Under the pieces are notes generated by a model. That model saw nothing but the letters and a program-made list of their open reading frames with translations. It did no database searches and was not told where the DNA came from. A stretch of DNA of 64,000 nucleotides, taken from the NCBI RefSeq assembly GCF_006345805.1, contig NC_043001.1, forward strand, positions 112,344,001 through 112,408,000, written 5' to 3'. Shown here one piece after another: positions 17,526 to 62,485 of the stretch (position 1 is the first letter of the stretch; every line of letters starts with the position of its first letter). Source of the DNA: Octopus sinensis. Taxonomy: Eukaryota. The translations under genes were made by a program, and so were the position numbers.

Positions 17526-18180
17526 TTTTATGTTTGACTTTTGCTTTACATTTGTACAAGTTGGATCCAAGTCTCACCAAGAGACCTCAAGAGACAAGTT
17601 GGAAGTTCATATTGGTGTTATACCTAGGGTGCCATATATTTGGTTTTGTACTTAGTGTATAAGTAGCCATGAGATAATTATGTTCGTTTCAAAACTTGAG
17701 ATTACATAGAAAGTATTTTGCGTAGGATATGGTCAGTTCCCATGAGCACAATCTTTTGAATTTTTGCCATTTTGGGGTTTCCTAGTATCTGAGCTAGGTA
17801 GCAATCAGGCCTTTTGCTATCATTCCCAGGGCACCTATGACAACTGGTATTGTTTTAGTCTTGATGTTCCACATTTTGCTAATTTCTATTTCAAGATATT
17901 TATATTTGCTCACGTTTTGGTAGGTCTTGACAAATAAGTTTATATCGATTGGGACAGTCATATCAATGAGGAGGCATGCTTTTTGTCTGAAGTCTTTCAA
18001 TATGATGTCTGGCATATTTGCATCTATCTTTCTATCAGTTTGAATGGTGAAGGTCCAGAGGAGTATGAAGTGATCATTTTCAAGCACTGGAGGTGGTTTC
18101 TGTTGCCACCAGTTTTTTGCACATTGCCCGGTGAATATATTGTGATGTTCTATCATACCTGTTGAGATGCTTTCAAGACG
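17525..18180 (-). mobile_element. R4/Dong-like RLE retrotransposon 3' fragment with (TAA)n tail
   Basis: KPPPVLENDHFILLWTFTIQTDRKIDANMPDIILKD...LLIDMTVPID...SKYKYLEIEISKMW...IPVVIGALG, then 3' UTR and the (TAA)n tail at 17375-17525. Confidence 0.85.
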
Positions 18181-18224
18181 CAAGACAAAGCAATGTAAAT
18201 GATAACATTGTTTTGTCTTGGTGT

Positions 18225-19205
18225 CTGATAAAAATGTTTCATGAAAATGTCTAATGAACATGTTTGATGAAAATGTTTGTGGAAAATGTTTGATGAAAAT
18301 GTTTGATGAAAATGTCAGATGAAAATGTCTGATGAATATGTTTGGTGAAAATGTTTGATGAAAATGTTTGATGAAAATATATGAAGAAAACGTTTGATAA
18401 AAATGTTTCATGAAAATTTCCGATGAAAATATTTGATGAAAATGTTTGATGAAAATGATTGATGAAAATGCCTGCTGAAAATGTTTCATGAAAATGTCTA
18501 ATGAATATGTTTGACAAAAATGTTTGATGAAAATGTCTGAGGAACATGTTTGATGAAAATGGTTGATGAAAATGTCTGATGAAAGTGTTCGATGAAAATG
18601 TTCGATGAAAATGTTTAATGAAAATGTCTGATGAAAATGTCTGATGAAAATGTTTGATGAAAATGTTTGATGGAAATGTTTTGATGAAAATGTTTGATGA
18701 AAATGTCTGATGAAAATGTCTGATGAATATGTTTGGTGAAAATGTTTGAAAATGTTTGATGAAAATATTTGATGAAAATGTTTGATGGAAATGTTTTGAT
18801 GAAAATGTTTGATGAAAATATTTGATGAAAACGTTTGATGAAAATGATTGATGAAAATGTCTGCAGAAAATGTTTCATGAAAATGTCTAATGAAGATGTT
18901 TGACAAAAATGTTTGATGAAAATGTCTGAGGAACATGTTTGATGAAAATGGTTGATGAAAATGTCTGATGAAAGTGTTCGATGAAAATGTTTGATGAAAA
19001 TGTTTAATGAAAATGTCTGATGAAAATGTTTGATGAAAATGTCTCATGAAAATGTCTGATGAAAATATTTGATGAAAACGTTTGATATTTGATGAAAATG
19101 TCTCATGAAAATATTTGATGAAGATGTCTAATGAAAATGTCTGATGAAAATGTTAAAATGTTTGACGAATATATTTGATGAAAATGTCTGATGAAAATGT
19201 TTCAT
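18225..19205. repeat. 13-bp satellite (TTGATGAAAATGT)n, about 75 units, with a ~389-bp higher-order repeat
   Basis: Unit read directly. Rare variants recur at a fixed offset, e.g. GGAACATG at 18541 and 18930. Confidence 0.95.
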
Positions 19206-43602: not shown

Positions 43603-45640
43603 AAATCTTTATTATGATTATAAAAATCGTTACAGAGATAGTACATTACAATACAAAACATAATTACAAAAAGTTTACGTTGTTCGTTTGATATTTACAT
43701 ATGTTGATTATGATACTAGACTTTACTTTTCTCCTTTTTTTAAAAAATAAAAATGATTTTGGCCAGATAGGTATATCACAGTCAGGATTCTTACCCGACA
43801 GCCTAAGAGCCCAGAGACTATTTTCTCCTTTCATGATGACCAAGCAGGGTTACTCACACCCACCTTTTTTATCACATCCTTCCATCGATTCACATACTTT
43901 TTCTGTGTCAGGTTCCTCTTCTCCAAATCCATCTTGCTCTTTAGATGGTATCTGAAGTATTTTAACATACCATATCCAGAGACAAAGGATCCTGACACCA
44001 AACCTTCCAATCTAGTTCTCCACACACACTCTTTCAGTACTTCCACCGTACAGTGAAAACAAGCCTCACCTTCCTTTGAGAGTCCAGCTGGAGGTATCAT
44101 CTTTATTATAGAACCAGCCGATAGCTGTACTCGTCCCAGATGCGACAACACGTGTTCTACGTAACTTATTAAGCCTGACAGCTCCTGACAATGTACAAAA
44201 GCGTGCTGAACGGTTTCATCGTCCAACCCACATCTTGGACATGTCGGTGACACTGACATTCCATGCCTATATAACTTATCGCGAACAGGTAGAGCACTCC
44301 TATAGCACTGCCAAGTCAGGGATTTTTGGTAATTGTCCAAATACCCCGGCTTGAAAGTCTTCTTAAACAGGTCGGATAGTTGATCCTCATCGAACCCCAG
44401 AGCCCCTCTTAGGATGTCGTCATTTTTTGCCTCTACCATCCTTCTATAAAATGTCGAGGTGGTATTCCCGCTGCCGGCTTTGCCTATCTTGTGGATCAGC
44501 CAGAGTGCCTGTCGGCACTCTTTCTGCTATAAAGTCAGATTCCGTCTTTTAATGAAACCGGGTTTAAATCTCTCCATAGAGTCCGGTCGCGGGAAGAATT
44601 TATCTGCCAGCGGACTCCACACCTTATCACCTTCCAGGTGAAACCAGAGATGTCTCAGTCTCAGCGCATGCCTGCGCATCATTAACCAAGGCATCCCCAA
44701 CCCACCCTTTAGTGGTTCCTGGCAACACACGGAGCGCCTTACAAGTGGCTTTCCTCCCTTCCACAAAAAGCGGAAAAGGAGTCGATCCAACTTGCTTAGC
44801 CACGAATCGGGGCAAGGCACGACGGTCAGGCGATAGGTGATGACAGATGCTATAAACACCTGTACCACTTCCGCCCTCCCTTTCAAGGAAAGATGCCTTC
44901 CGGACCACTTCCGTACTATGGCTTCTACCTTGGTCACTACCTCGCTCCAATTTTTCTCCGTCTGGGAGTCTGAACCAAACCAAACTCCAAGCAATTTCAC
45001 AGGACCATCTGTCCAGTGTCCAACAACACTGGACGATATCGATTTGTTCCTCCAGGTGCCGAGGCGCAAACCAGTGGACTTGTCCTTGTTAACTTTTGCC
45101 CCTGCCACCGCTTCGTATCTTCGGAGAGCACCCTCTACACGAGTTAGTTGTGCTTCGTTGGACACGATGAAGGTGACGTCATCCGCATACGCAGAAACAG
45201 ACTTACCGCATCCGATTTCATTAGGATCGCATCCCACCGTCTCCAACTTCCGCAGCAATGGCTCAAGAGCCAAAACGTACAGGAGAGGGGACAAGGGACA
45301 TCCTTGACGAACTGAACGCTTAATCGAAAACGGTTCCGTTAAGTAACCGTTTATCTGGACTGTGGACTTGATACCGCTGTACATAGCTGATATCCACCCG
45401 CGAAAGTCAGGGCCTAGCCCAGCCGCTTCGAGAACCGTCGCCAGGTACTGATGATTTACCCTATCAAATGCTTTACTTTGGTCTAAATGGACCAATGCCC
45501 CTCCTTTGCCGGCTAATTGCCCAACCCTGTCTATAGTGTAGCGTAGAAGGTGAAGATTATCTTCGATCGACCTGCCTGCGATTGCACATGTCTGTGCCTT
45601 CCCGACAAGTTTCTTCATGACGACCTTCAATGGCTAACAG
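43602..45640 (-). mobile_element. 5'-truncated L1-Tx1 clade LINE (RT plus CCHC zinc knuckle), open except for one TAG
   Basis: RT motifs LDQSKAFDRV, VRQGCPLSPLLY and YADD, then CPRCGLDDETVQHAFVHC. ORFs 44527-45630 and 43831-44439 are in the same frame and separated by a single TAG. The 3' UTR has AATAAA (43608-43613, minus) running into (TA)n/(TG)n. Confidence 0.93.
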
Positions 45641-46994
45641 CTGTTTCCTGCAGTCATTATAGGTACATTACTGATAGGTTTAATTAATTGGTCTTTTGAT
45701 CAGTTGAGAAAATTGAACGACCTAAGAAAACTAATGCTACTTTCGTCAGAGCCGAAGTATATTAGATGTTTTTGTACAGAGTTTTCCGAAGAATAAGTTA
45801 CAACAACCGTAATTTAAACAACAATATCAAGAATTCTTAAGTTTTTAAATGACCTTTCACTTAATATGTTTGGTGAAGTGATTTGATCCAAAATCATGTG
45901 AAAAAAAAAGTCATTTATTAGATATTAATTTGAGTTACATTGCTCAGTTCTTTATTAAATTTAATAAATCAAAGTTATGCAAACCGCACGCCAGGTCGAT
46001 TTCTTAATTATTTACGACTAGAGACATGTCTGTCAATAGGCGATCGATCTGTGATATGGTCAGACCATGATTAGTTTCATCTAGGAGTCATTTGCATTGA
46101 GTGATCACTGTAAGGCAATGAACGAAATATTTTAGAATACTGTGGACTTTATGACAATGAATCAATCCCTATTTGAGGAGCCTGTTTGTATTTACAAGCG
46201 CCAACGCGTTGATATTTAAATGTATAGTCTAGCCACAAGCAATCTGCAGCCCTTGGGATTATATGAATGAAATACCTAACGAAAAATGACCACCAAATTT
46301 TTTAGTCGTTCGACCTGCCTGCTGATGAATGATGTCTCATGCGGCACGCTTCTCGAAAAAAGGTTGCCCATGTCTGGCCTTGCTTGATGGTAGGATATGG
46401 AAAGATTGATGCTATACAGGGTATGTGACAGTCTCTTCACATGGTCTTCATTGGATTTCATTTTAGAGTCGATAAGAGGATTCTTCAGTTTTCCTGAATT
46501 GAAATAATTGTTTTAATTTATGATATTCTTATCAAAAATTCTATGAAGTTTGTCTGTTTAGTTTATTTACTGTTTTGTAAGTGACTTGGATAGAGAAGAA
46601 CGTTCATGACTCTTGTCAGAGACTACGGAAAAAGGTGAATGAGAGGAGGAAATTTTTCTCAGACTCAAATGATAACTTAAACTTTCTTTTCGATACAAAT
46701 ACCCAAGAAGCACCAAGTGTTTGTGTTAAACGGTGAAGGATCACCACCCGAGTCTACACAGCTTACTTTTACCAATTTTATTCACAAAGCTTTGGCTAAT
46801 CGGATGTTGTGGTTAAGGAACTTATCCAAAATATCCCACAGCGTGATTGGATCCGAAACCTCATAGTTTCAAAGCGTCCTTCCGAACCACGCATCTATAA
46901 AAGGGAAGTTTAACAGAAGGTCGTGGTTTTGATCTGAATAAATTGGAAGATGCTGAAATCTTACCTTATGACCTCCACTATTAGCTAAAATACT

Positions 46995-47207
46995 AAGGCG
47001 GTGAGCAGGCAGAATCGATAACACTCCGGGCAAAATGCTTAACAGCATTTCGTCCGTCTTCACATTCTGAGTTCAAATTCCACCGAGGTTGACTTTGTAT
47101 TTCATCCTTTCGGGTTTGACAAAATAAGTACCAATCGAGTACTGGGGTCGAGATAATTGACTTGTCTCCTCCCCCGAGCTTGTTGGCCTTGTATCAACAT
47201 TTGAAAC
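46995..47207 (+). mobile_element. SINE family B
   Basis: Same consensus. Confidence 0.85.
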
Positions 47208-47849
47208 TATTCTTAAATGAAATATTGATTTGACCCACTTTTACCAAAGCCGCACGTCTGTAAACCGGTGTAACCAATTCCGACACCTGTATATGATAGG
47301 TAAATGTTTTATGAATCACAAACTGAATGTAGAAATGAAAGTAGAACCCCGCCAGTTTATCTGCTTTTCTAATATTCATCACCTTTGTATTCATATTGTG
47401 TATCAAATGTAACAATGTAAAACTAAAGCAGGTCGTAAAAAAGCAACATTTACCAATATTATTAGATGATTCTTTCGCTGACAGCCGTCAGATGAAGCAA
47501 ACTCTGAATTTCCAATATATAGAATATGGAAAGAGTGAACGAATGGCAATCTGGTGTGACATTAACTTGGACCAAAGTGTCTCAAAATGGAGTAAATTGG
47601 TGTTAGTGTTTCCGATATGTCTTATTTGTGATATGAGTCTGGTGTATTTGAGGTAGTCTGCATTATTTTGTGTTAAAAGCCATTATATCATGTATCAAAT
47701 GTGACTGACTAAAAAATTCAAATTCGTGTGGTGAAATCAAGCATATCAAATATACAGCAATCGATAAGAGAAAAAGAGTCCTAGGGAATACATACAACCC
47801 ATCCTTACATATGATTGCGATTACATGGAACATCAGCAAACAAGTAGAA

Positions 47850-48230: not shown

Positions 48231-50619
48231 ATTCCTCAAACTTATACGCATTGCAGGTGTTGGGTTCAGTAATTTACGAAGTTCCTTGTGTAAATCTTGC
48301 TGACAAACAACATGGGCATCAATTTTTCTAGGTCTACTATTGCAACTAGCACCAATGCCCTGAGTCTATTCCTTATCACAGGCTCTGAGTCTATTCCTTA
48401 TCTTCGAATGCTTGATATTTTCTTACCAATATTTGAAGTCAATATTTGATAAATAATACAAGAAATGTTTCTTAATTTTGCCTACATCAGACAGCCTATA
48501 CGCGGCTGTTTCATCTACCAGAAATAATAGCCAAATTTCCATTGAGTCATAAAAATGATGTTAGCATCACGTTGTATAACATAATATTAGATACATATCT
48601 CGGAAATTACCTTTAATTATATATCATCGATTAGTGTAATCAGGAACGGGCGTATACAATATCATTAGCTGTAGTATCGCTATCACCACTAACACCAAGT
48701 ATTACCTGTAGTAACATCACTATTAACACTACGCCGACCACTATCATCAACAGCCCAGCCAGTACATCAACAATAACACCAATAACAACAATATTTGTAG
48801 CACCACCAAAACAGCATCAACACCTACAACAGCAACAATAAAACCAACCCCCAACTCTGCTACCTCTAACAACAGTAAAAAAGCCAACAACAATAATAAT
48901 GTACAAGCAATGCAAACAATTGTACAAACCCCACCCCCCAAAAAAAAAACAAGAACATCATTACCAACACAACCAACAACAACAACAATGGCAGCAAGTG
49001 CATCGAAATGGCAGCCGTTTGATATTCGTTTACAAGTCAGGTGTATCAGAATTAAGTATCCTGATTATGGAGACAAGATACGGATAATAATTTTCGTGCA
49101 TCCTTTTCATTACTGTATGTTTTTAGTCATCTTGTTATTTCTCCCTTCTTTTGCACTCTCTGTACTTCTAAATAAATTGCTAAATATAGTTAGATAACTT
49201 GGATATGTTTCGGCCAAAGGTTGACCCTGGTCATTTTTAAACGTAATAGCACCACCTGATAGGATCTGTTAAGTCATTTTAAAGTTATGTTTTTTTGCAT
49301 CATCGTCCATTCAAGTAGGAAGTTGTTACTGACTGAGATGAATCGATGTGTAGATGGCTTATCTGGTATCTCTTGAAGTTGTCCAGGTTTCATTTGAAGG
49401 TGATGGGAGTTTTTTTCTTTTTTCATGTTATCCGGGATAATGTTAAACAGAGCATGGCTTGTTGAGGACAAAGAACGTTGTAGTTTTGGATTTATGCGTT
49501 GCAAATCTGTATTGTGTCGGGAGCGTTAAATATAATGTTCTAATCCCGCCGATGCAAACTTTGGCTTTCATCATTCCGGGATCGAAAAATAAAATACAAA
49601 TCTAAGGCAGAGAACTGGCAGAATAGCCATAGAGTCGGAGTAGATGCCTTGGTGGTATTTGTTTCGGCTCTTTGCATTCTGAGTTCGAATCGCACCGTAG
49701 TCTACTTGAGTGGCAGACTTAACCCGTCAGTGGGTTTATCACCACTTCTTGGCATCCACTTTATTGTAAGCACGAGGAGAGAAGTAGGTCATCAAATTAA
49801 GGACACTTTCTCCCTTCCTCATTCCCACTATTTTTTATGGTCCTTTAGAGGGCCAAGCGCACTGTTCTTCCCTCTTAACTAATATATATATTTAAAAAAC
49901 ACAACATTCAAGCACACAAACACAATTATCTTGGGCAAATGTTTTGATATAATGTGACACAATTACGTCGTGGAAGAGGTTGTGTGAGTATGTGTGTGTG
50001 TATGTGTGTGTGTATGTGTGTGTGCGCACGCACACTCTGTTTTCTGTGTATGCGTATTGCTGCGCATATGTGTGTGTCTATGGTTTTCAAATTCTTTGAT
50101 TTACTCAAGCTATAGCTATATGGTGTTCAACCCGTATGGAATCTGTATTGATGATTGGATAAATGTGCTCGTAGGAACATTTACCGCTTGTGTAATACGT
50201 TCCTCGTATTAAAACATGGAGTTATGTAGTAAAACACGGAAGGATCACAGCTAGAGCACCTTCGATCAGTTACCTCGATTATGAGTAATCTGGGTATAAG
50301 TATCACCAATCGCTACAAACACACGGGATAATGTAATCCTACGTAAACAATGCCCGTTAAAAAAGAAAAAAAAGAAAACGAAGATGAGGTTGTCATGGTC
50401 GGGAGTCTTTGATTATAGATCTGCTCAGTTAGAACTGAACTGAGGTGGAAAAAAATATCAACAACAACGATAAATAACCCATTCAGAGTTGAAACTACCA
50501 AATTTCACAAGTCATGAGTCACAATACTCCCGTATTGCCTTTTATAGACTACTGTTAAGCTACGTAAATGTTACATTGAAGTTTGAGTGAAACTTATTGA
50601 AGTGATAACTCAAGCTGAA

Positions 50620-50655
50620 TTCTATGACGTTATAAACAAGTAAATGACGTAACAA
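50620..50655 (+). promoter_or_regulatory. Candidate promoter elements upstream of the EB1-like gene (two TGACGT CRE/ATF-like sites flanking TATAAA)
   Basis: TGACGT at 50625 and 50645 and TATAAA at 50631, about 380 bp upstream of the ATG. Motif presence only. Confidence 0.3.
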
Positions 50656-51011
50656 CAAGGATCGTTAGAAAGTAACGCATTCTTGGGATGTCGCTTTTTG
50701 GCCTTTATTTTTTCCTATAGTTTCTAAGCCTTCCTAAGCGTCTAATACGAACAAGAAAATTCGCTTCTGGAAAGTTAGTAAGCTGCAAAACTTAGATAAT
50801 TGTTATAATTCTCTGAAACCAGATATATATCTTTTCTTGTTATCCATATCGCCCCTGCTGCTTGTCATTTGAAACTAATTGAAAAATTGAAAATAGTAAA
50901 TAAATCTAAATTGAAAATTACCCCTCAGAATTACAGAACTATTAAAAGAACGAAAATTAACTATTCGGAAAAATAATTAAAAAGCGAATTAAAGAAAAAA
51001 AGGCATCTACC

Positions 51012-51953
51012 ATGGCTTGGAAAGCTATTACAGTATTACCAAATGTCCGAAATACTAGTAAAAAGGAATTGATGGACTTCCTCCAACGGTACATTAACCC
51101 TCAACTTGAGCGCATTGAAGACCTTGGCAGCGGATTCGATTTATGTTTCGGGATGTTTTTACTTTTTCCTAATTCTATTAAAGTTTCCGAAATCAGGTTC
51201 GGTAAGAACCTAAGTGTTAGCTCGAGACATAATAATTTTAAACGGCTCCAAAGTGCATTCAATACTGTTGGTGTAGAAAAGAATTTCCCAATGGAAAATA
51301 TGATGCGGGGAAACTTCCAAGCTAACTACTATTTTGGACAATGGTTTAAGGGGTTTTTTGAGGCTAACTACAGTGGCGAACCTTACGACGTAAATAAGCT
51401 ACGCCAAATGTGCTGCAACCGAGCAGCATCAAAAGATCGATTCACCAAGGACATACGCGGAGGAGAATGCAGGTTAGCAGCAGAAGCCAAGAGAATGCCA
51501 AAGTACATCAAACAAAGAGCAGCTATTATCTCTCCTACTACATCTTCTCCTCCACCTCAATCTCCTCATCATACTTCTAATTCTCCTCCTCCTTCAAGGC
51601 TACAAAGTGCTGTGAGCATATTAACTAAGGCCAATTTGGTAGATACTTTGTCGCAGACTGACGAAACTTATTGCGGGATTCTTAACAGCATTTACAGCTT
51701 CGAACAAGAAGCAGATGAACAAAAAGAACTTCGATCTGATTTATTACGAGAGAAAGCAGAGCTTGAACAAGCAGTTAGGGAACTTCAGAAAGAAAAGGAA
51801 AAGTTGTCCACTAATTACGAACATTCGAATCGGGAAAAGAGGTATTTCTATGATAAATTACGTGAAATCGAAAAGTTATGCCTCGAGGAACCGATAGACA
51901 GCTTGAGAATGTCAATAAAAACAGTCTTATATCAACAAGGAATTCCTTTATAA
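51012..51953 (+). CDS. EB1: Divergent, intronless microtubule end-binding protein (EB1/MAPRE family): N-terminal CH domain, Ser/Pro linker, coiled coil and EBH domain, no EEY/F tail
   Basis: 313-aa uninterrupted ORF with ACCATGG start context. The N-terminus aligns by eye with the EB1 CH domain: RIEDLGSG~KIEQLCSG, LLFPNSI~[27 protein letters not shown]~[48 protein letters not shown]~[28 protein letters not shown]. The C-terminus [17 protein letters not shown]...VLY matches EB1 KERDFYFGKLRNIELIC...ILY. Confidence 0.92.
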   Translation: [313 protein letters not shown]

Positions 51954-52787
51954 AACTCTGTTCTCTATTACCCGTAATGTCAGTAAAACATGGATCAACA
52001 ATCGTTGTTCTTCAGTCAGTGAATTTTATTTCTTCACTTCTAAATTATTTTTATATTTTTCCAGTTGTTATTTTTAAATTTTGATATTGATTTCTGTCGC
52101 CATTTATAGGACATTTTTATCATTCTTTTTTACCCTCAAAACGTCAGCTCTGATCAATTAAACTTATAATCGAAGGCATTTCTGTCTTGGCTAATCCATA
52201 TTTTTCGTATATCAGGTTCTACTCGTCTCTTGTCTAAAACGGATGGGATTTCACTTGAAGAAATGTTTAGCTACAATTTCAAACAGATTGAGCGAACTAA
52301 TAACAAAGGGGTCATTATTAGAGTTAATTAACATTGGAGTATTTCTTTTAATTGATAATTAAGAGGTCATTAAATGTACAAAAGGTCAAGATTCAGTAGA
52401 AGCATATCAGGCATCAAATGTCGAAATAATTTAAGACATCAGAAAGTTTACAATTTTTGGTATCTTTTTTATTGTTTGTCTTTTCCACTTGCTTCACTCA
52501 TTGCGGCACACTGAGGCAACGCCTTGAAACGTTTGGTTGTACAAATCGGCTCAAGTAATATACTTATTGTCTACCAAATTCATTCACAAGGCTTTGAGCA
52601 CCCTGGTACTATAGATGGAGTCACTATAGTTGAAGTCACTTAGCATCTCACGGTGGAACAACTCGGAACCATGTAGTCTGACTGCAGACGTCTTACCGCG
52701 CAGCATTTTTTTTAACGACTTATATAATAAATTTTAATTATATAACATTAAAATGACCTTTTTACTTACTCATTTACTGTCTTACTG

Positions 52788-60829: not shown

Positions 60830-62485
60830 ATCTCAGTAAATCAGTACTTGCAACCACTCCAACGACCTCACAGGTTGTGTAGTGGGTAGTATGGATGTGA
60901 TTTCACTCTACCCATCTATAGACATAGATTTTGCTGTGGAGAAATGCATTCAGGTAATCTGTGAGAGTCAGGTGGAATTCCGTAAGTTCAACTCGAGGGA
61001 AGTGGACCTCCTCCTCAGACTATGCTATGGCAGTAACTATTTAGATGACCAGGACCTCAGTAGATTCTGCCCCACCAGGTCACAGAGGGAAAGACCACTT
61101 ACCATCACTTCAGCAGTGAAGAAAAGCACCACAGAGCGCTGGAGTGGCTGCACCGCACCCACCCGAAACCCTGAGAACAACAATCAGGTGAAAGAAATGA
61201 TTGCACATGCAATAGGGGCCAGTGTACAAACCACCTTGAAAAACCACATAGTAAAGTTCAACAAAAAACTATACATGCAGGTTCAAGGTGCAGCCATCGG
61301 TGTCGGTGTAGCTGGAGATGTGGTTGGCCTCTTCATGACCTGGTGGGACAGAAAACTTAAACAAATGTTAACAGAACAGTTCACAACTCTTCTACTCTAC
61401 GGTAGATATGTAGATGACATTAATATCATAGTTAGGACCAACTCTAGTGATGTAGAGACTGAGAAGAACGTAATGGAGAGCATCCAGCAAATAGCTAACT
61501 CCATCCACCAAAGTATCAAGGTAACTATAGATTAACCCACCAAGCACTCCAACAACAGACTCCCTGTACTTGATACTGAACTTTGGTTAGACACTGTGAA
61601 CAATAGAGTGCAGCTCCTCCACTCCTATTACATGAAACCCATAACTTCAAAATATGTTGTTTACAAGAACTCGGCTTTGTCACACAACATGAAAATTAAC
61701 ATACTGATAGCAGACCTAGTTAGAATAATGAACAATGTGTCACCACTATGCGAACCCTATGAAACGAAAATACATATACAGAACTTCATGTACCGCATGC
61801 AGTACTCTGGATATGATCAGAAAGATAGGGTTCGAGTATACAGGGGGGGGCTAGAAAGAAATTCAGTAACATTATACATAATGATACCAGTGGTACCTGC
61901 CTTAGATATAGAAGCAAATAATGGAATAGGACACAAAGAACTTGTGACAAAGCAAACATGACGAACACGTGGTATAAAACCGACAAATATCAAGGAGTCA
62001 TGTTTGTAGAGGCCGCAGCCAATGGAGAACAAGCTCGTAGATTTATAAAATCTCTGAAGGAGACCAAACTCAACATTAAGATTGTTGACCACCAGGGAAC
62101 TCCGTCAGATCACAACTATGTAGGACGTACCCCTTTGAGAATATCATATGCACCAATGATAACTGCATGGTATGTAGGATTAGCCCTGGCATTAACTGTA
62201 GAACTCGAAATGTAGTTTACTGCATAAGATGCATAGAATGTGCTTGTAAAGACATGAACATGACGTACATAGGGGAGATATCTAGGAGCATTACGAACGA
62301 CTAAATGAACATCTGAGACAATATGTCGACAAAAGACAGTCCTCCATACTCTATCAAAATGCCAAAGACCACCATGGAGGCAACTTGGGTCAACTTGACA
62401 TCCGCATCGTATCCAAGCACCAAAAAGACCCAACACTCAGACAAATACGGGAGTACGTCCTTATAAATGAAACTTCCCCAATAAT
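60830..62485 (+). mobile_element. 5'-truncated Penelope-like element (RT, Cys-rich linker, C-terminal GIY-YIG endonuclease), disrupted
   Basis: GSMDVISLYPS, QVQGAAIG, RYVDD and RLPVLD RT motifs. In-frame TAA at 61533-61535 and a frameshift near the G-run at about 61845. Then CTNDNCMVC...CRTRNVVYCIRC...YIGEISRS (GIY-YIG) and ERLNEH. Confidence 0.88.

What the first reader, a model, noticed from the sequence alone, without database searches (positions are those of the whole stretch)
51012..51953. Intact, intronless, fast-evolving EB1 paralog: probable functional retrogene
Seen: a 313-aa ORF with no internal stop and an ideal ACCATGG start, in a window where every transposon ORF is broken, with an EB1-like CH domain and EBH motif. 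Known: canonical animal EB1 genes are multi-exon and their CH domains are very highly conserved. This one keeps the core but replaces many near-invariant residues (SRHD>SKKE, LCSG>LGSG, HEY>SSR, QDNFEF>QANYYF, KKFF>KGFF). Inference: a lineage-specific retrocopy under selection for a new role. Divergent germline EB paralogs are known in Drosophila. Whether one is described in cephalopods I cannot check.
Basis: partly seen in the sequence, partly recalled or inferred. Interest (0 to 1): 0.7.

Follow-up and report, generated by a model that had tools for sequence, protein, structure and literature searches.

The report
Ancient intronless EB1-like gene in octopus
This is a real, selectively maintained single-exon gene for a divergent, tail-less relative of the microtubule end-binding protein EB1; it is shared by octopuses, argonauts and cuttlefish and belongs to a wider, apparently undescribed cephalopod family of such genes.

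Summary
It encodes an EB-type CH domain, a disordered Ser/Pro linker, a long helix and an EBH motif. It lacks the acidic EEY tail of canonical EBs.

The gene is under purifying selection:
- Octopus vulgaris carries the identical protein, with 3 synonymous changes and flanks 2-4% diverged.
- dN/dS is about 0.23 against a second octopus, 0.11 against Argonauta and 0.07-0.12 within cuttlefish copies.

Every orthologue examined is one uninterrupted ORF, whereas a canonical EB1 gene used as control has at least 5 introns, two inside the CH domain.

The gene is not octopus-specific. It sits in a 100%-bootstrap clade of divergent, mostly single-exon EB-like proteins whose named members are all coleoid cephalopods. 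That clade includes double-CH and long-coiled-coil forms and a tandem pair.

Retroposition is therefore plausible, but probably at the base of the family. No poly(A) or target-site trace remains, and I could not retrieve the canonical octopus EB1. The O. vulgaris database model of this gene is a chimeric mis-prediction. Expression and function are untested.

Verdict: observation confirmed, interpretation partly supported, moderate interest.

The parts
51012..51953 (+). Complete single-exon CDS (313 aa plus TAA) of the divergent EB-like protein.
   Evidence: Searches show the ORF. O. vulgaris carries the identical protein with 3 synonymous differences. Orthologous uninterrupted ORFs exist in Argonauta, cuttlefish and a second decapodiform. 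dN/dS is 0.07-0.23.
51048..51407 (+). EB-type calponin-homology (microtubule-binding) domain, aa 13-132.
   Evidence: phmmer against PDB gives E=7e-25 to human EB1. The AlphaFold model of this part matches EB3, EB1, Mal3 and Bim1 CH domains with TM 0.71-0.81 normalised to target and rmsd 2.4-2.9 A; actin-binding CH domains only reach E>=0.05. The equivalents of EB1 K89, Q102, N104, F107 and W110 are kept; many surface lysines are lost. dN/dS within this domain is 0.06-0.12.
51408..51659 (+). Disordered basic Ser/Pro-rich linker, aa 133-216. It ends in the conserved SQTDE motif (aa 214-218, nt 51651-51665).
   Evidence: AlphaFold pLDDT is below 50 for aa 134-222. This is the fastest-evolving part, with dN/dS 0.17-0.66. 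SQTDE is invariant in 7 of the 8 orthogroup sequences, and P0008 has SQTED. Variants occur in paralogues P0011, P0045 and P0158, and the motif is absent from about 130 canonical EBs.
51660..51887 (+). Long predicted alpha-helix, aa 217-292: the presumed dimerising coiled coil.
   Evidence: The AlphaFold model has helix 217-292 with pLDDT 74-89 in its C-terminal half. The segment aligns with the EB1 coiled coil. dN/dS for aa 226-313 is about 0.11. Dimerisation itself was not tested.
51831..51932 (+). EB-homology (EBH) motif, aa 274-307; the protein ends 6 residues later with no acidic EEY/F tail.
   Evidence: Pfam PF03271 scores 27.5 bits against a cut-off of 27. The equivalents of EB1 F216-Y217-F218 (here YFY), K220, L221, R222, E225, C228, L246 and Y247 are kept. 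The last 20 residues carry net charge +1, against -8 in canonical EBs.
50622..50682 (+). Conserved upstream non-coding block with two TGACG(T) CRE/ATF-like half-sites 20 bp apart (50625-50629 and 50645-50652). It is a candidate promoter element.
   Evidence: Apart from two repeat-like matches elsewhere in the window, this is the only flank sequence still alignable between Octopus and Argonauta. It lies at -387/-367 from the ATG in the window and at -355/-335 in Argonauta. Function is inferred only.
52157..52162 (+). First ATTAAA after the stop codon (+204): a candidate polyadenylation signal.
   Evidence: Motif scan only. There is no transcript evidence.
46639..46746 (+). NOT part of the gene. 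This is the counterpart of 'exon 1' of the O. vulgaris database model (P0002).
   Evidence: In this window it carries an in-frame TAA. It is separated from the rest of that 'exon' by an insertion of about 0.8 kb that is absent in O. vulgaris.

Best explanation
The ORF is a functional, single-exon gene of Octopus sinensis. It encodes a divergent member of the RP/EB (end-binding) family: an EB-type CH domain, a basic disordered linker, a coiled coil and an EBH motif, but no acidic EEY/F tail.

It is an old coleoid-cephalopod gene, not a recent retrocopy. It belongs to a clade of divergent, mostly intron-free EB-like genes in which every member with a taxon name or identified sequencing run is a coleoid cephalopod.

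The most likely history (inferred, about 0.5-0.6) is this. One EB1 mRNA was retroposed before octopods and decapodiforms split. The intronless founder then multiplied by DNA duplication, as the tandem pair in Argonauta shows, and diversified.

The most likely mechanism (inferred, about 0.6) has three parts:
1. The protein is a homodimer that binds microtubules through its CH domains, because the equivalents of EB1 K89, Q102 and N104 are kept.
2. Because it lacks the acidic tail and is basic overall (pI 9 against 5), it would bind along the lattice or bundle microtubules rather than track tips cleanly.
3. It may recruit partners through the conserved EBH pocket and the family-specific SQTDE linker motif, but it cannot dock CAP-Gly proteins, which need the EEY/F tail.

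A germline (spermatid) role like that of Drosophila Mst27D is a guess (about 0.3).
For: Shown by tool results:
- ORF and domains.
- CH fold matching EB CH domains.
- Source genome is GCA_006345805.1 chromosome CM016863.1.
- Purifying selection: 0 nonsynonymous and 3 synonymous differences against O. vulgaris, whose flanks are 96.4-97.8% identical. omega is 0.23 against the second octopus, 0.11 against Argonauta and 0.12 for P0004-P0005, with 0.06-0.12 in the CH domain. omega is 0.065 between two cuttlefish.
- Uninterrupted ORFs: Argonauta, the ERZ21867824 decapodiform, Sepia pharaonis, and paralogues in O. vulgaris and Argonauta. In P0045 the CH domain is also uninterrupted.
- Control: the canonical EB1 of Amphiura spans 14.5 kb with at least 6 coding exons and has introns after about aa 45 and aa 94, inside the CH domain.
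- Family: an exhaustive profile search puts the divergent cephalopod proteins on top and canonical EBs only from about 150 bits downward. In an NJ tree of CH domains the divergent clade has 100% bootstrap and the orthogroup 90%.
- Two paralogues per decapodiform species.
- Retained and lost functional residues, charge and absent tail.
- Pfam CH matches 7 of 15 and Pfam EB1 matches 5 of 15 family members.
- Precedent: Drosophila Mst27D is a testis-specific EB-like retrocopy that homodimerises, binds along the microtubule lattice and bundles (PMC10359004).
Against: - No transcript or expression evidence. All Logan contigs carrying these genes end in simple repeats and look genomic.
- No poly(A) tract or target-site duplication at the locus.
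- The canonical EB1 of octopus was not retrieved, so the parent, its introns and the nesting of the clade within molluscan EB1s are untested.
- The NJ tree on about 136 columns is vulnerable to long-branch attraction. The closest canonical hits come from assorted phyla, which gives no signal of origin.
- Stepwise intron loss cannot be excluded.
- Many basic CH-surface residues of EB1 are replaced (K59/60, K66, K83/R84, K95, K100, K113), so microtubule affinity could be weak or the target different.
- The AlphaFold model is only moderately confident, with mean pLDDT 58 from a 5-sequence alignment.
- The O. vulgaris annotation gives a multi-exon model for this locus.
Confidence: 0.75

Rival explanations
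1. It is a primary, lineage-specific retrocopy made directly from the canonical octopus EB1 mRNA.
For: The CDS is intronless while canonical EB1 genes are multi-exon. The gene is dispersed, with no other EB-like copy in the 64 kb window.
Against: Orthologues or co-orthologues exist in Argonauta and in two decapodiforms. The nearest relatives are other intron-free EB-like genes forming a 100%-bootstrap clade. No poly(A) remnant or target-site duplication is present.
Confidence: 0.08
2. The family arose by ordinary DNA duplication of EB1 and lost its introns later, either stepwise or by gene conversion with cDNA. No retroposed founder was involved.
For: Family members do duplicate at the DNA level: P0011 and P0045 are tandem neighbours 5.5 kb apart in Argonauta. 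P0045 is annotated with a short internal gap and a small 3' exon.
Against: All seven family genes mapped on genomic DNA lack introns in the CH domain, where the canonical control has two. The remaining members were called as uninterrupted ORFs on short contigs. Simultaneous loss of all introns is the signature of retroposition (established knowledge).
Confidence: 0.25
3. The real gene is the multi-exon model annotated in O. vulgaris (P0002, 299 aa), and the 313-aa ORF is only partly coding.
For: NCBI/UniRef carry that model. It spans 27 kb with an upstream first exon and a tiny last exon.
Against: In O. sinensis the model's first exon has an in-frame stop and is split by a 0.8 kb insertion. 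The model discards the first 61 residues of the CH domain and the EBH motif. Those parts are 100% conserved between the two octopuses and conserved as far as cuttlefish. Every other species has one uninterrupted ORF.
Confidence: 0.05
4. It is a decaying processed pseudogene whose open frame is a matter of chance.
For: It lies among transposon debris and there is no expression evidence.
Against: The frame is open in at least 7 species or copies. omega is 0.07-0.23, with 0 nonsynonymous against 3 synonymous changes between O. sinensis and O. vulgaris. Shuffled sequence gives ORFs of at most 169 aa.
Confidence: 0.02
5. The protein works mainly by heterodimerising with canonical EB1 through the coiled coil and EBH region. 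This would make tail-less heterodimers that modulate or inhibit recruitment of plus-end-tracking proteins, rather than acting as an independent microtubule binder.
For: The EBH and coiled-coil core residues are conserved. Mammalian EB1 and EB3 heterodimerise (established knowledge).
Against: The CH domain is at least as constrained as the C-terminus (omega 0.06-0.12), which argues for a CH-dependent function. Drosophila Mst27D did not co-precipitate with Eb1.
Confidence: 0.15

Closest known systems
Canonical RP/EB proteins (human EB1/MAPRE1 and EB3, S. pombe Mal3, S. cerevisiae Bim1)
   Same: It has the same order of parts: an N-terminal EB-type CH domain, a linker, a coiled coil and an EBH motif. 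The CH fold superposes on theirs with TM 0.71-0.81. Key residues are kept: K89, Q102, N104, W110, K220, L221, E225 and Y247.
   Different: The CH domain is only 37% identical to human EB1, whereas the three animal canonical CH domains compared are 68-78% identical to human EB1. There is no acidic EEY/F tail, so no CAP-Gly docking site. The protein is basic (pI 9.0 against 5.0), and many CH-surface lysines and the HEY loop are replaced. It has a family-specific SQTDE motif. The gene is a single exon, against at least 6 coding exons in the canonical control.
Drosophila testis-specific EB1-family paralogues (Mst27D, CG15306, CG32371, CG2955)
   Same: They are divergent EB-like proteins that exist alongside a canonical Eb1. 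Mst27D arose by retroposition, homodimerises through its C-terminal region, binds along microtubules rather than at tips, and bundles them (PMC10359004). This is the best functional analogue.
   Different: The origins are in different phyla, so independence is assumed rather than tested. Mst27D resembles EB1 only in the CH domain, whereas the octopus protein keeps a recognisable EBH motif. Testis expression and Nup358 binding are shown for Mst27D and nothing comparable is known here.
Other cephalopod EB-like paralogues: O. vulgaris CAI9736750.1 (P0014); Argonauta GAB1600285.1/GAB1600286.1 (P0011/P0045), GAB1599771.1 (P0006, two CH domains) and GAB1601711.1 (P0051)
   Same: They fall in the same 100%-bootstrap clade. 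Their CH domains are uninterrupted by introns, they share CH signature changes such as GTG.DFC and NF(Y/F)F.(Q)WF, and none has an EEY tail.
   Different: Their architectures differ: CH only, tandem double CH, or CH plus a coiled coil of about 500 aa. Their CH domains are 39-51% identical to that of the window protein.
[quoted passage not shown]
   Same: They represent the same gene. P0003 is the Argonauta orthologue (67% identity, single exon). P0002 overlaps aa 62-288 of this ORF at 100% identity.
   Different: P0002 is a chimeric model that loses half of the CH domain and the EBH motif. No publication discussing these genes was found.

Membership tests
RP/EB (end-binding, MAPRE) family | N-terminal EB-type calponin-homology domain | tested here: met
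   phmmer against PDB gives E=7e-25 to human EB1, aa 13-132. Foldseek top hits are EB3, EB1, Mal3 and Bim1 CH domains with TM 0.71-0.81. The generic Pfam CH model matches 7 of 15 family members but not this protein itself.
RP/EB (end-binding, MAPRE) family | Microtubule-contact and nucleotide-state-sensing residues of the CH domain | tested here: inconclusive
   The equivalents of K89, Q102, N104, F107 and W110 are invariant in the orthogroup. H18, K59/K60, K66, H69-Y71, K83/R84, K95, K100, E106 and K113 are replaced. The importance of K89 and Q102 is from established literature recalled from memory.
RP/EB (end-binding, MAPRE) family | Coiled-coil dimerisation segment | tested here: inconclusive
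   AlphaFold predicts one long helix at aa 217-292, and the segment aligns to the EB1 coiled coil. The oligomeric state cannot be tested with these tools.
RP/EB (end-binding, MAPRE) family | EB-homology (EBH) C-terminal motif | tested here: met
   PF03271 scores 27.5 bits against a cut-off of 27, which is marginal, at aa 274-307. YFY-x-KLR-x-IE-x-x-C and the LY motif are conserved. 5 of 15 family members match PF03271.
RP/EB (end-binding, MAPRE) family | Acidic C-terminal tail ending in EEY/F (CAP-Gly docking) | tested here: not met
   The protein ends ...VLYQQGIPL. Its last 20 residues have net charge +1, against -8 in human, insect and brittle-star EB1. The tail is absent in all orthogroup members.
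RP/EB (end-binding, MAPRE) family | Autonomous tracking of growing microtubule plus ends | not testable with these tools
   This needs live imaging or TIRF reconstitution.
Retrogene (processed, mRNA-derived gene copy) | Coding sequence lacks the introns present in the parent gene type | tested here: met
   The window ORF and all orthologues are uninterrupted. The canonical EB1 of Amphiura has at least 5 introns, two within the CH domain.
Retrogene (processed, mRNA-derived gene copy) | An intron-containing parent gene identified in the same genome | not tested
   The canonical octopus EB1 could not be retrieved.
Retrogene (processed, mRNA-derived gene copy) | Poly(A) remnant and target-site duplications at the insertion | tested here: not met
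   There is no A-run of 8 or more within 700 bp after the stop codon. Target-site duplications were looked for only by eye in the printed flanks, and no repeat search was run. Erosion is expected for a gene this old. The cuttlefish P0007/P0153 copies do have an A14-15 run 5-6 nt after the stop, of uncertain meaning.
Retrogene (processed, mRNA-derived gene copy) | The closest relative is the parent gene (a direct copy) | tested here: not met
   The closest relatives are other intron-free EB-like genes of cephalopods. Any retroposition is best placed at the base of the family.
Germline-specific divergent EB paralogues (Drosophila Mst27D type) | Testis- or spermatid-restricted expression | not testable with these tools
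   No expression data were reachable. The only hint is a conserved upstream pair of CRE-like TGACG sites.
Germline-specific divergent EB paralogues (Drosophila Mst27D type) | Common descent with the Drosophila genes | not tested
   The Drosophila paralogues were not in the tree. Every named cephalopod-clade member is a cephalopod, so independent origin is assumed.

The most novel reading that the evidence does not exclude
Coleoid cephalopods carry an ancient, previously undescribed family of at least 6 paralogue groups of intron-free, tail-less EB-like genes. The family was founded by one retroposed EB1 mRNA before the octopus-squid split. It then diversified into single-CH, tandem double-CH and CH-plus-giant-coiled-coil forms that carry a family-specific SQTD(E/K) motif. 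On this reading the proteins are lattice-binding or bundling adaptors for specialised microtubule arrays, for example in spermatid head shaping or in neurons. The window gene is one conserved member.
Probability: 0.35. Interest if true: 0.6.

Novelty: new variant of a known kind. Interest (0 to 1): 0.42.

Why it matters
EB proteins are the hub of the microtubule plus-end network and are among the most conserved cytoskeletal proteins. A whole clade of EB-like genes has lost the CAP-Gly docking tail, turned basic and gained a new conserved linker motif. It has still stayed under purifying selection since before the octopus-cuttlefish split, which is a few hundred million years on published estimates recalled from memory. 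That amounts to a natural experiment on which EB features are separable.

It parallels the independent testis-specific EB expansion in Drosophila, including a retroposed member. It may therefore point to a recurrent route by which animals build specialised microtubule-bundling adaptors.

There is also a practical point. The gene is mis-modelled in the O. vulgaris annotation, where the model truncates both functional domains, and the correct CDS is the single 313-codon exon.

The finding does not open a long-standing question and the function is still unknown, so interest is moderate.

Tried and rejected
1. Two of the three large homology searches were wasted. A CH-only alignment (A3) returned nothing at all. 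As a result the canonical EB1 of octopus, or of any mollusc, was never retrieved.
2. Naming 30 of the representative hits found no molluscan canonical EB1. The best canonical hits are a dragonfly (an artefactual double domain), a brittle star, a tapeworm, a flatworm, an acanthocephalan, a tick and nematodes, which gives no phylogenetic signal of origin.
3. I looked for transcript evidence in Logan contigs. All end in microsatellites or A-rich low-complexity sequence and are colinear with genomic flanks, so they are most likely genomic and say nothing about expression.
4. Searching the literature for the run and assembly accessions found nothing. One run, ERR12945500, was identified as Acanthosepion esculentum through the Sepia officinalis genome paper.
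5. Retro-insertion hallmarks (poly(A), target-site duplications) were looked for and not found.
6. Whether the octopus gene is orthologous to the decapodiform P0004/5 or P0007/8 copy is unresolved. The CH-domain bootstrap is 62% against 38%, and the C-terminus looks more like P0007/8.
7. No second EB-like copy exists in the window.
8. Literature searches for a described cephalopod EB family found only a 'MAPRE1' label in the giant-squid Hox region.
Full report
**What is in the sequence.**
Window 51012..51953 (+) holds a 313-codon ORF that starts at ACCATGG and ends in TAA. It is the only long ORF in the 64 kb window that is not transposon-derived or low-complexity. Thirty mononucleotide shuffles of the window never gave an ATG-ORF longer than 169 aa.

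- Against PDB sequences, aa 13-132 match the CH domain of human EB1 (2r8u, E=7e-25), then EB3, fission-yeast Mal3 and budding-yeast Bim1. A second, weaker stretch aligns to the EB1 coiled-coil and EBH region.
- Pfam finds the EB1 C-terminal motif PF03271 at aa 274-307 with 27.5 bits, just above the cut-off of 27.
- An AlphaFold model built on a 5-sequence alignment has mean pLDDT 58. It shows a helical CH domain, a disordered segment at aa 134-222, one long helix at aa 217-292 and a short return helix at aa 295-308.
- Foldseek places the CH part on EB3, EB1, Mal3 and Bim1 with TM 0.71-0.81 normalised to target and rmsd 2.4-2.9 A. Actin-binding CH domains score far worse.

**Where it comes from.**
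The exact protein is encoded once, on chromosome CM016863.1 of assembly GCA_006345805.1. From memory that assembly is Octopus sinensis. The window is 95-99% identical in non-coding DNA to the O. vulgaris assembly GCA_951406725.2, which fits.

**Is it a living gene?**
Yes, as far as sequence evolution can show.

- O. vulgaris carries the same 313-aa ORF. The two ORFs differ at 3 of 942 nucleotides, all synonymous third positions. The 1.5 kb upstream and 0.8 kb downstream are 96.4% and 97.8% identical.
- A second octopus species, known only from Logan contigs that are colinear with the window at 84% identity, gives dN/dS = 0.23 at dS = 0.19.
- Argonauta hians has a 305-aa orthologue at 67% identity. 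dN/dS is 0.11, with dS saturated.
- By domain, the CH domain (0.06-0.12) and the coiled-coil/EBH region (about 0.11) are strongly constrained. The linker is relaxed (0.17-0.66).

The pseudogene reading is excluded.

**How old is it?**
Two full-length relatives exist in decapodiforms.

- P0007/P0153 has 313 aa and ends EGLPM, like the octopus QGIPL. It occurs in Sepia pharaonis and in reads of Acanthosepion esculentum.
- P0004 has 275 aa and occurs in the same sequencing runs, so it comes from the same animal.
- A second decapodiform-like assembly, ERZ21867824, also has both copies, P0005 and P0008.

All are single uninterrupted ORFs under purifying selection: 0.12 for P0004-P0005 and 0.065 between the two cuttlefish. 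The P0007/8 lineage evolves about four times faster in protein than P0004/5. P0007/8 is 51% identical between the two species and P0004/5 about 85%.

In an NJ tree of CH domains, the octopod genes plus both decapodiform copies form an orthogroup with 90% bootstrap. Which decapodiform copy is the strict orthologue is unresolved, at 62% against 38%. The gene therefore predates the octopod-decapodiform split, which is a few hundred million years ago by published clocks as I recall them. It is not an octopus-lineage novelty.

**The wider family.**
An exhaustive profile search of 1.84 billion cluster representatives gave 2083 EB-family hits. At the top of the list, separated from canonical EBs, is a set of divergent proteins. 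Those that carry names are all cephalopod:

- O. vulgaris P0014 (369 aa, CH only).
- Argonauta P0006 (two CH domains in tandem).
- Argonauta P0011 (695 aa, CH plus a long coiled coil) and its neighbour P0045, 5.5 kb away.
- Argonauta P0051.

Several unnamed Logan and ENA proteins belong here too, including further double-CH forms (P0009, P0158). In the CH-domain tree this set is monophyletic with 100% bootstrap, with the usual caveat about long-branch attraction.

Wherever genomic DNA was available, the CH domain is uninterrupted: P0014, P0011, P0045 and all the orthologues. As a control, the canonical EB1 of the brittle star Amphiura spans 14.5 kb. It has at least six coding exons, with introns after about aa 45 and aa 94 inside the CH domain.

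The window protein's CH domain is 37% identical to human EB1. Human EB1 is 78% identical to an insect EB1, 68% to the brittle-star EB1 and 68% to an unnamed canonical EB1.

Many paralogues keep an EBH-like ending of the form F-x-KL-x-x-IE-x-x-C...LR...L. None of the sequences printed ends in EEY/F.

**Retrogene or not.**
Wholesale absence of introns across the clade, set against a multi-exon canonical gene type, is what retroposition predicts. Three reservations apply.

1. The window locus has no poly(A) remnant or target-site duplication.
2. The nearest relatives are other intron-free paralogues, and some of these are tandem DNA duplicates.
3. I could not retrieve the canonical octopus EB1 to show the parent.

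The best reading is one old retroposition that founded the family, followed by DNA duplication. This particular gene may never have been a primary retrocopy. DNA duplication with later intron loss remains possible, at about 0.25.

**The database model is wrong.**
The O. vulgaris entry 'RP/EB family member 1-like' (P0002, 299 aa) spans 27 kb. It joins an upstream exon to an internal acceptor inside the ORF, leaves through an internal GT and ends in a tiny exon 22 kb downstream.

In this window the upstream 'exon' contains an in-frame TAA and is split by a 0.8 kb insertion. The parts of the ORF that the model discards, half of the CH domain and the EBH motif, are perfectly conserved. The true CDS is the single exon.

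**How it probably works (inference).**

- *Kept in all orthogroup members:* the equivalents of EB1 K89, Q102, N104, F107 and W110 in the CH domain. In the EBH region, K220, L221, E225, C228, L246, Y247 and the aromatic triad (YFY in place of FYF).
- *Lost:* H18, K59/K60, K66, the HEY loop, K83/R84, K95, K100, E106, K113, E211 and the entire acidic tail.
- *Charge:* the whole protein has pI 9.0, against 5.0 for human EB1.

From established EB biology as I recall it, dimerisation is needed for microtubule binding, the EEY/F tail docks CAP-Gly proteins, and the acidic tail disfavours lattice binding. From this I infer a homodimer that still binds microtubules, more likely along the lattice or as a bundler than as a clean tip tracker. 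It could still recruit partners through the EBH pocket but cannot recruit CLIP-170 or p150-type proteins.

The invariant SQTDE motif just before the coiled coil has variants in paralogues P0011, P0045 and P0158. It is absent from about 130 canonical EBs. It is a candidate family-specific docking or phosphorylation site.

Drosophila Mst27D behaves in the way I infer: it is a testis-specific EB-like retrocopy that homodimerises, binds the lattice and bundles (PMC10359004).

**A possible promoter.**
Apart from two repeat-like matches elsewhere in the window, the only flank sequence still alignable between Octopus and Argonauta is a block of about 60 bp, 320-390 bp upstream of the ATG. It contains two TGACG(T) CRE/ATF-like half-sites 20 bp apart. 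The decapodiform copies also have clustered TGACG sites upstream. This is a lead for where transcription starts. It fits, but does not show, CREM-type germline regulation.

**Novelty and verdict.**
The gene is already labelled 'EB1-like' by automatic annotation, and divergent EB paralogues are known in flies, so the kind is known. Full-text searches found no description of an ancient coleoid family of intron-free, tail-less EB-like genes with double-CH and giant-coiled-coil members and its own linker motif. The only trace was a 'MAPRE1' label inside the giant-squid Hox region.

I rate it a new variant of a known kind, of moderate interest (0.42). No step had to be referred.

Noticed in passing
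window 46639-47686; L022 3001-3276: The first 'exon' of the O. vulgaris gene model P0002 is continuous in O. vulgaris. In O. sinensis it carries an in-frame TAA and is split by an insertion of about 0.8 kb (window about 46747-47563). By eye the insert contains a SINE-like element similar to others in the window, for example near 49590-49700.
   Followed up: partly
window 50622-50682; L001; L003 9644-9705: A conserved non-coding block with two CRE/ATF-like TGACG(T) sites 20 bp apart lies about 370 bp upstream of the ATG. It is shared by two octopuses and Argonauta. The cuttlefish and ERZ21867824 copies also have clustered TGACG sites upstream.
   Followed up: partly
window 51651-51665 (aa 214-218): The SQTDE motif is invariant in the orthogroup except in P0008, which has SQTED. 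It recurs as TQTDK, AQTDK or SQTDQ in paralogues P0011, P0045 and P0158. It is absent from about 130 canonical EBs. Its function is unknown.
   Followed up: partly
L013 10001-12088 and 17559-19342 (Argonauta hians): Two EB-like paralogues lie in tandem 5.5 kb apart: P0011 (695 aa, single exon) and P0045 (355 aa). This shows that the family also spreads by DNA duplication.
   Followed up: partly
P0006 (Argonauta), P0009 (ENA) and P0158 (Logan): Some family members carry two EB-type CH domains in tandem on one chain. I know of no such architecture among canonical EBs.
   Followed up: no
L012 and L014, just after the stop codon: The cuttlefish P0153 and P0007 copies have an A14-15 run starting 5-6 nt after the stop codon. 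It could be a poly(A) relic or chance. The octopus locus has nothing similar.
   Followed up: no
window 43831-45630 (-): A broken LINE: an RVT_1 reverse-transcriptase fragment (367-aa ORF) and a zf-RVT fragment (202-aa ORF) lie in separate frames.
   Followed up: yes
window 17794-19047 (-): The longest ORF of the window (417 aa) consists mostly of tandem 'HFHQTFSSNIFI'-like repeats, followed by a C-terminal part that looks transposon-derived to me. The only Pfam hit (DNMK, 32 bits, no separate stretch) looks spurious.
   Followed up: partly
window 60882-61535 (+): A 217-aa ORF resembles a reverse-transcriptase fragment by eye but has no Pfam match.
   Followed up: partly
PMC6962438 (giant squid genome paper): A gene labelled MAPRE1 is listed among the non-Hox genes inside the Architeuthis Hox cluster region. 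It might be a member of this intron-free family.
   Followed up: no
window 49981-50024 and many other places: (TG)n and other microsatellites generate most of the other long 'ORFs' in the window.
   Followed up: no
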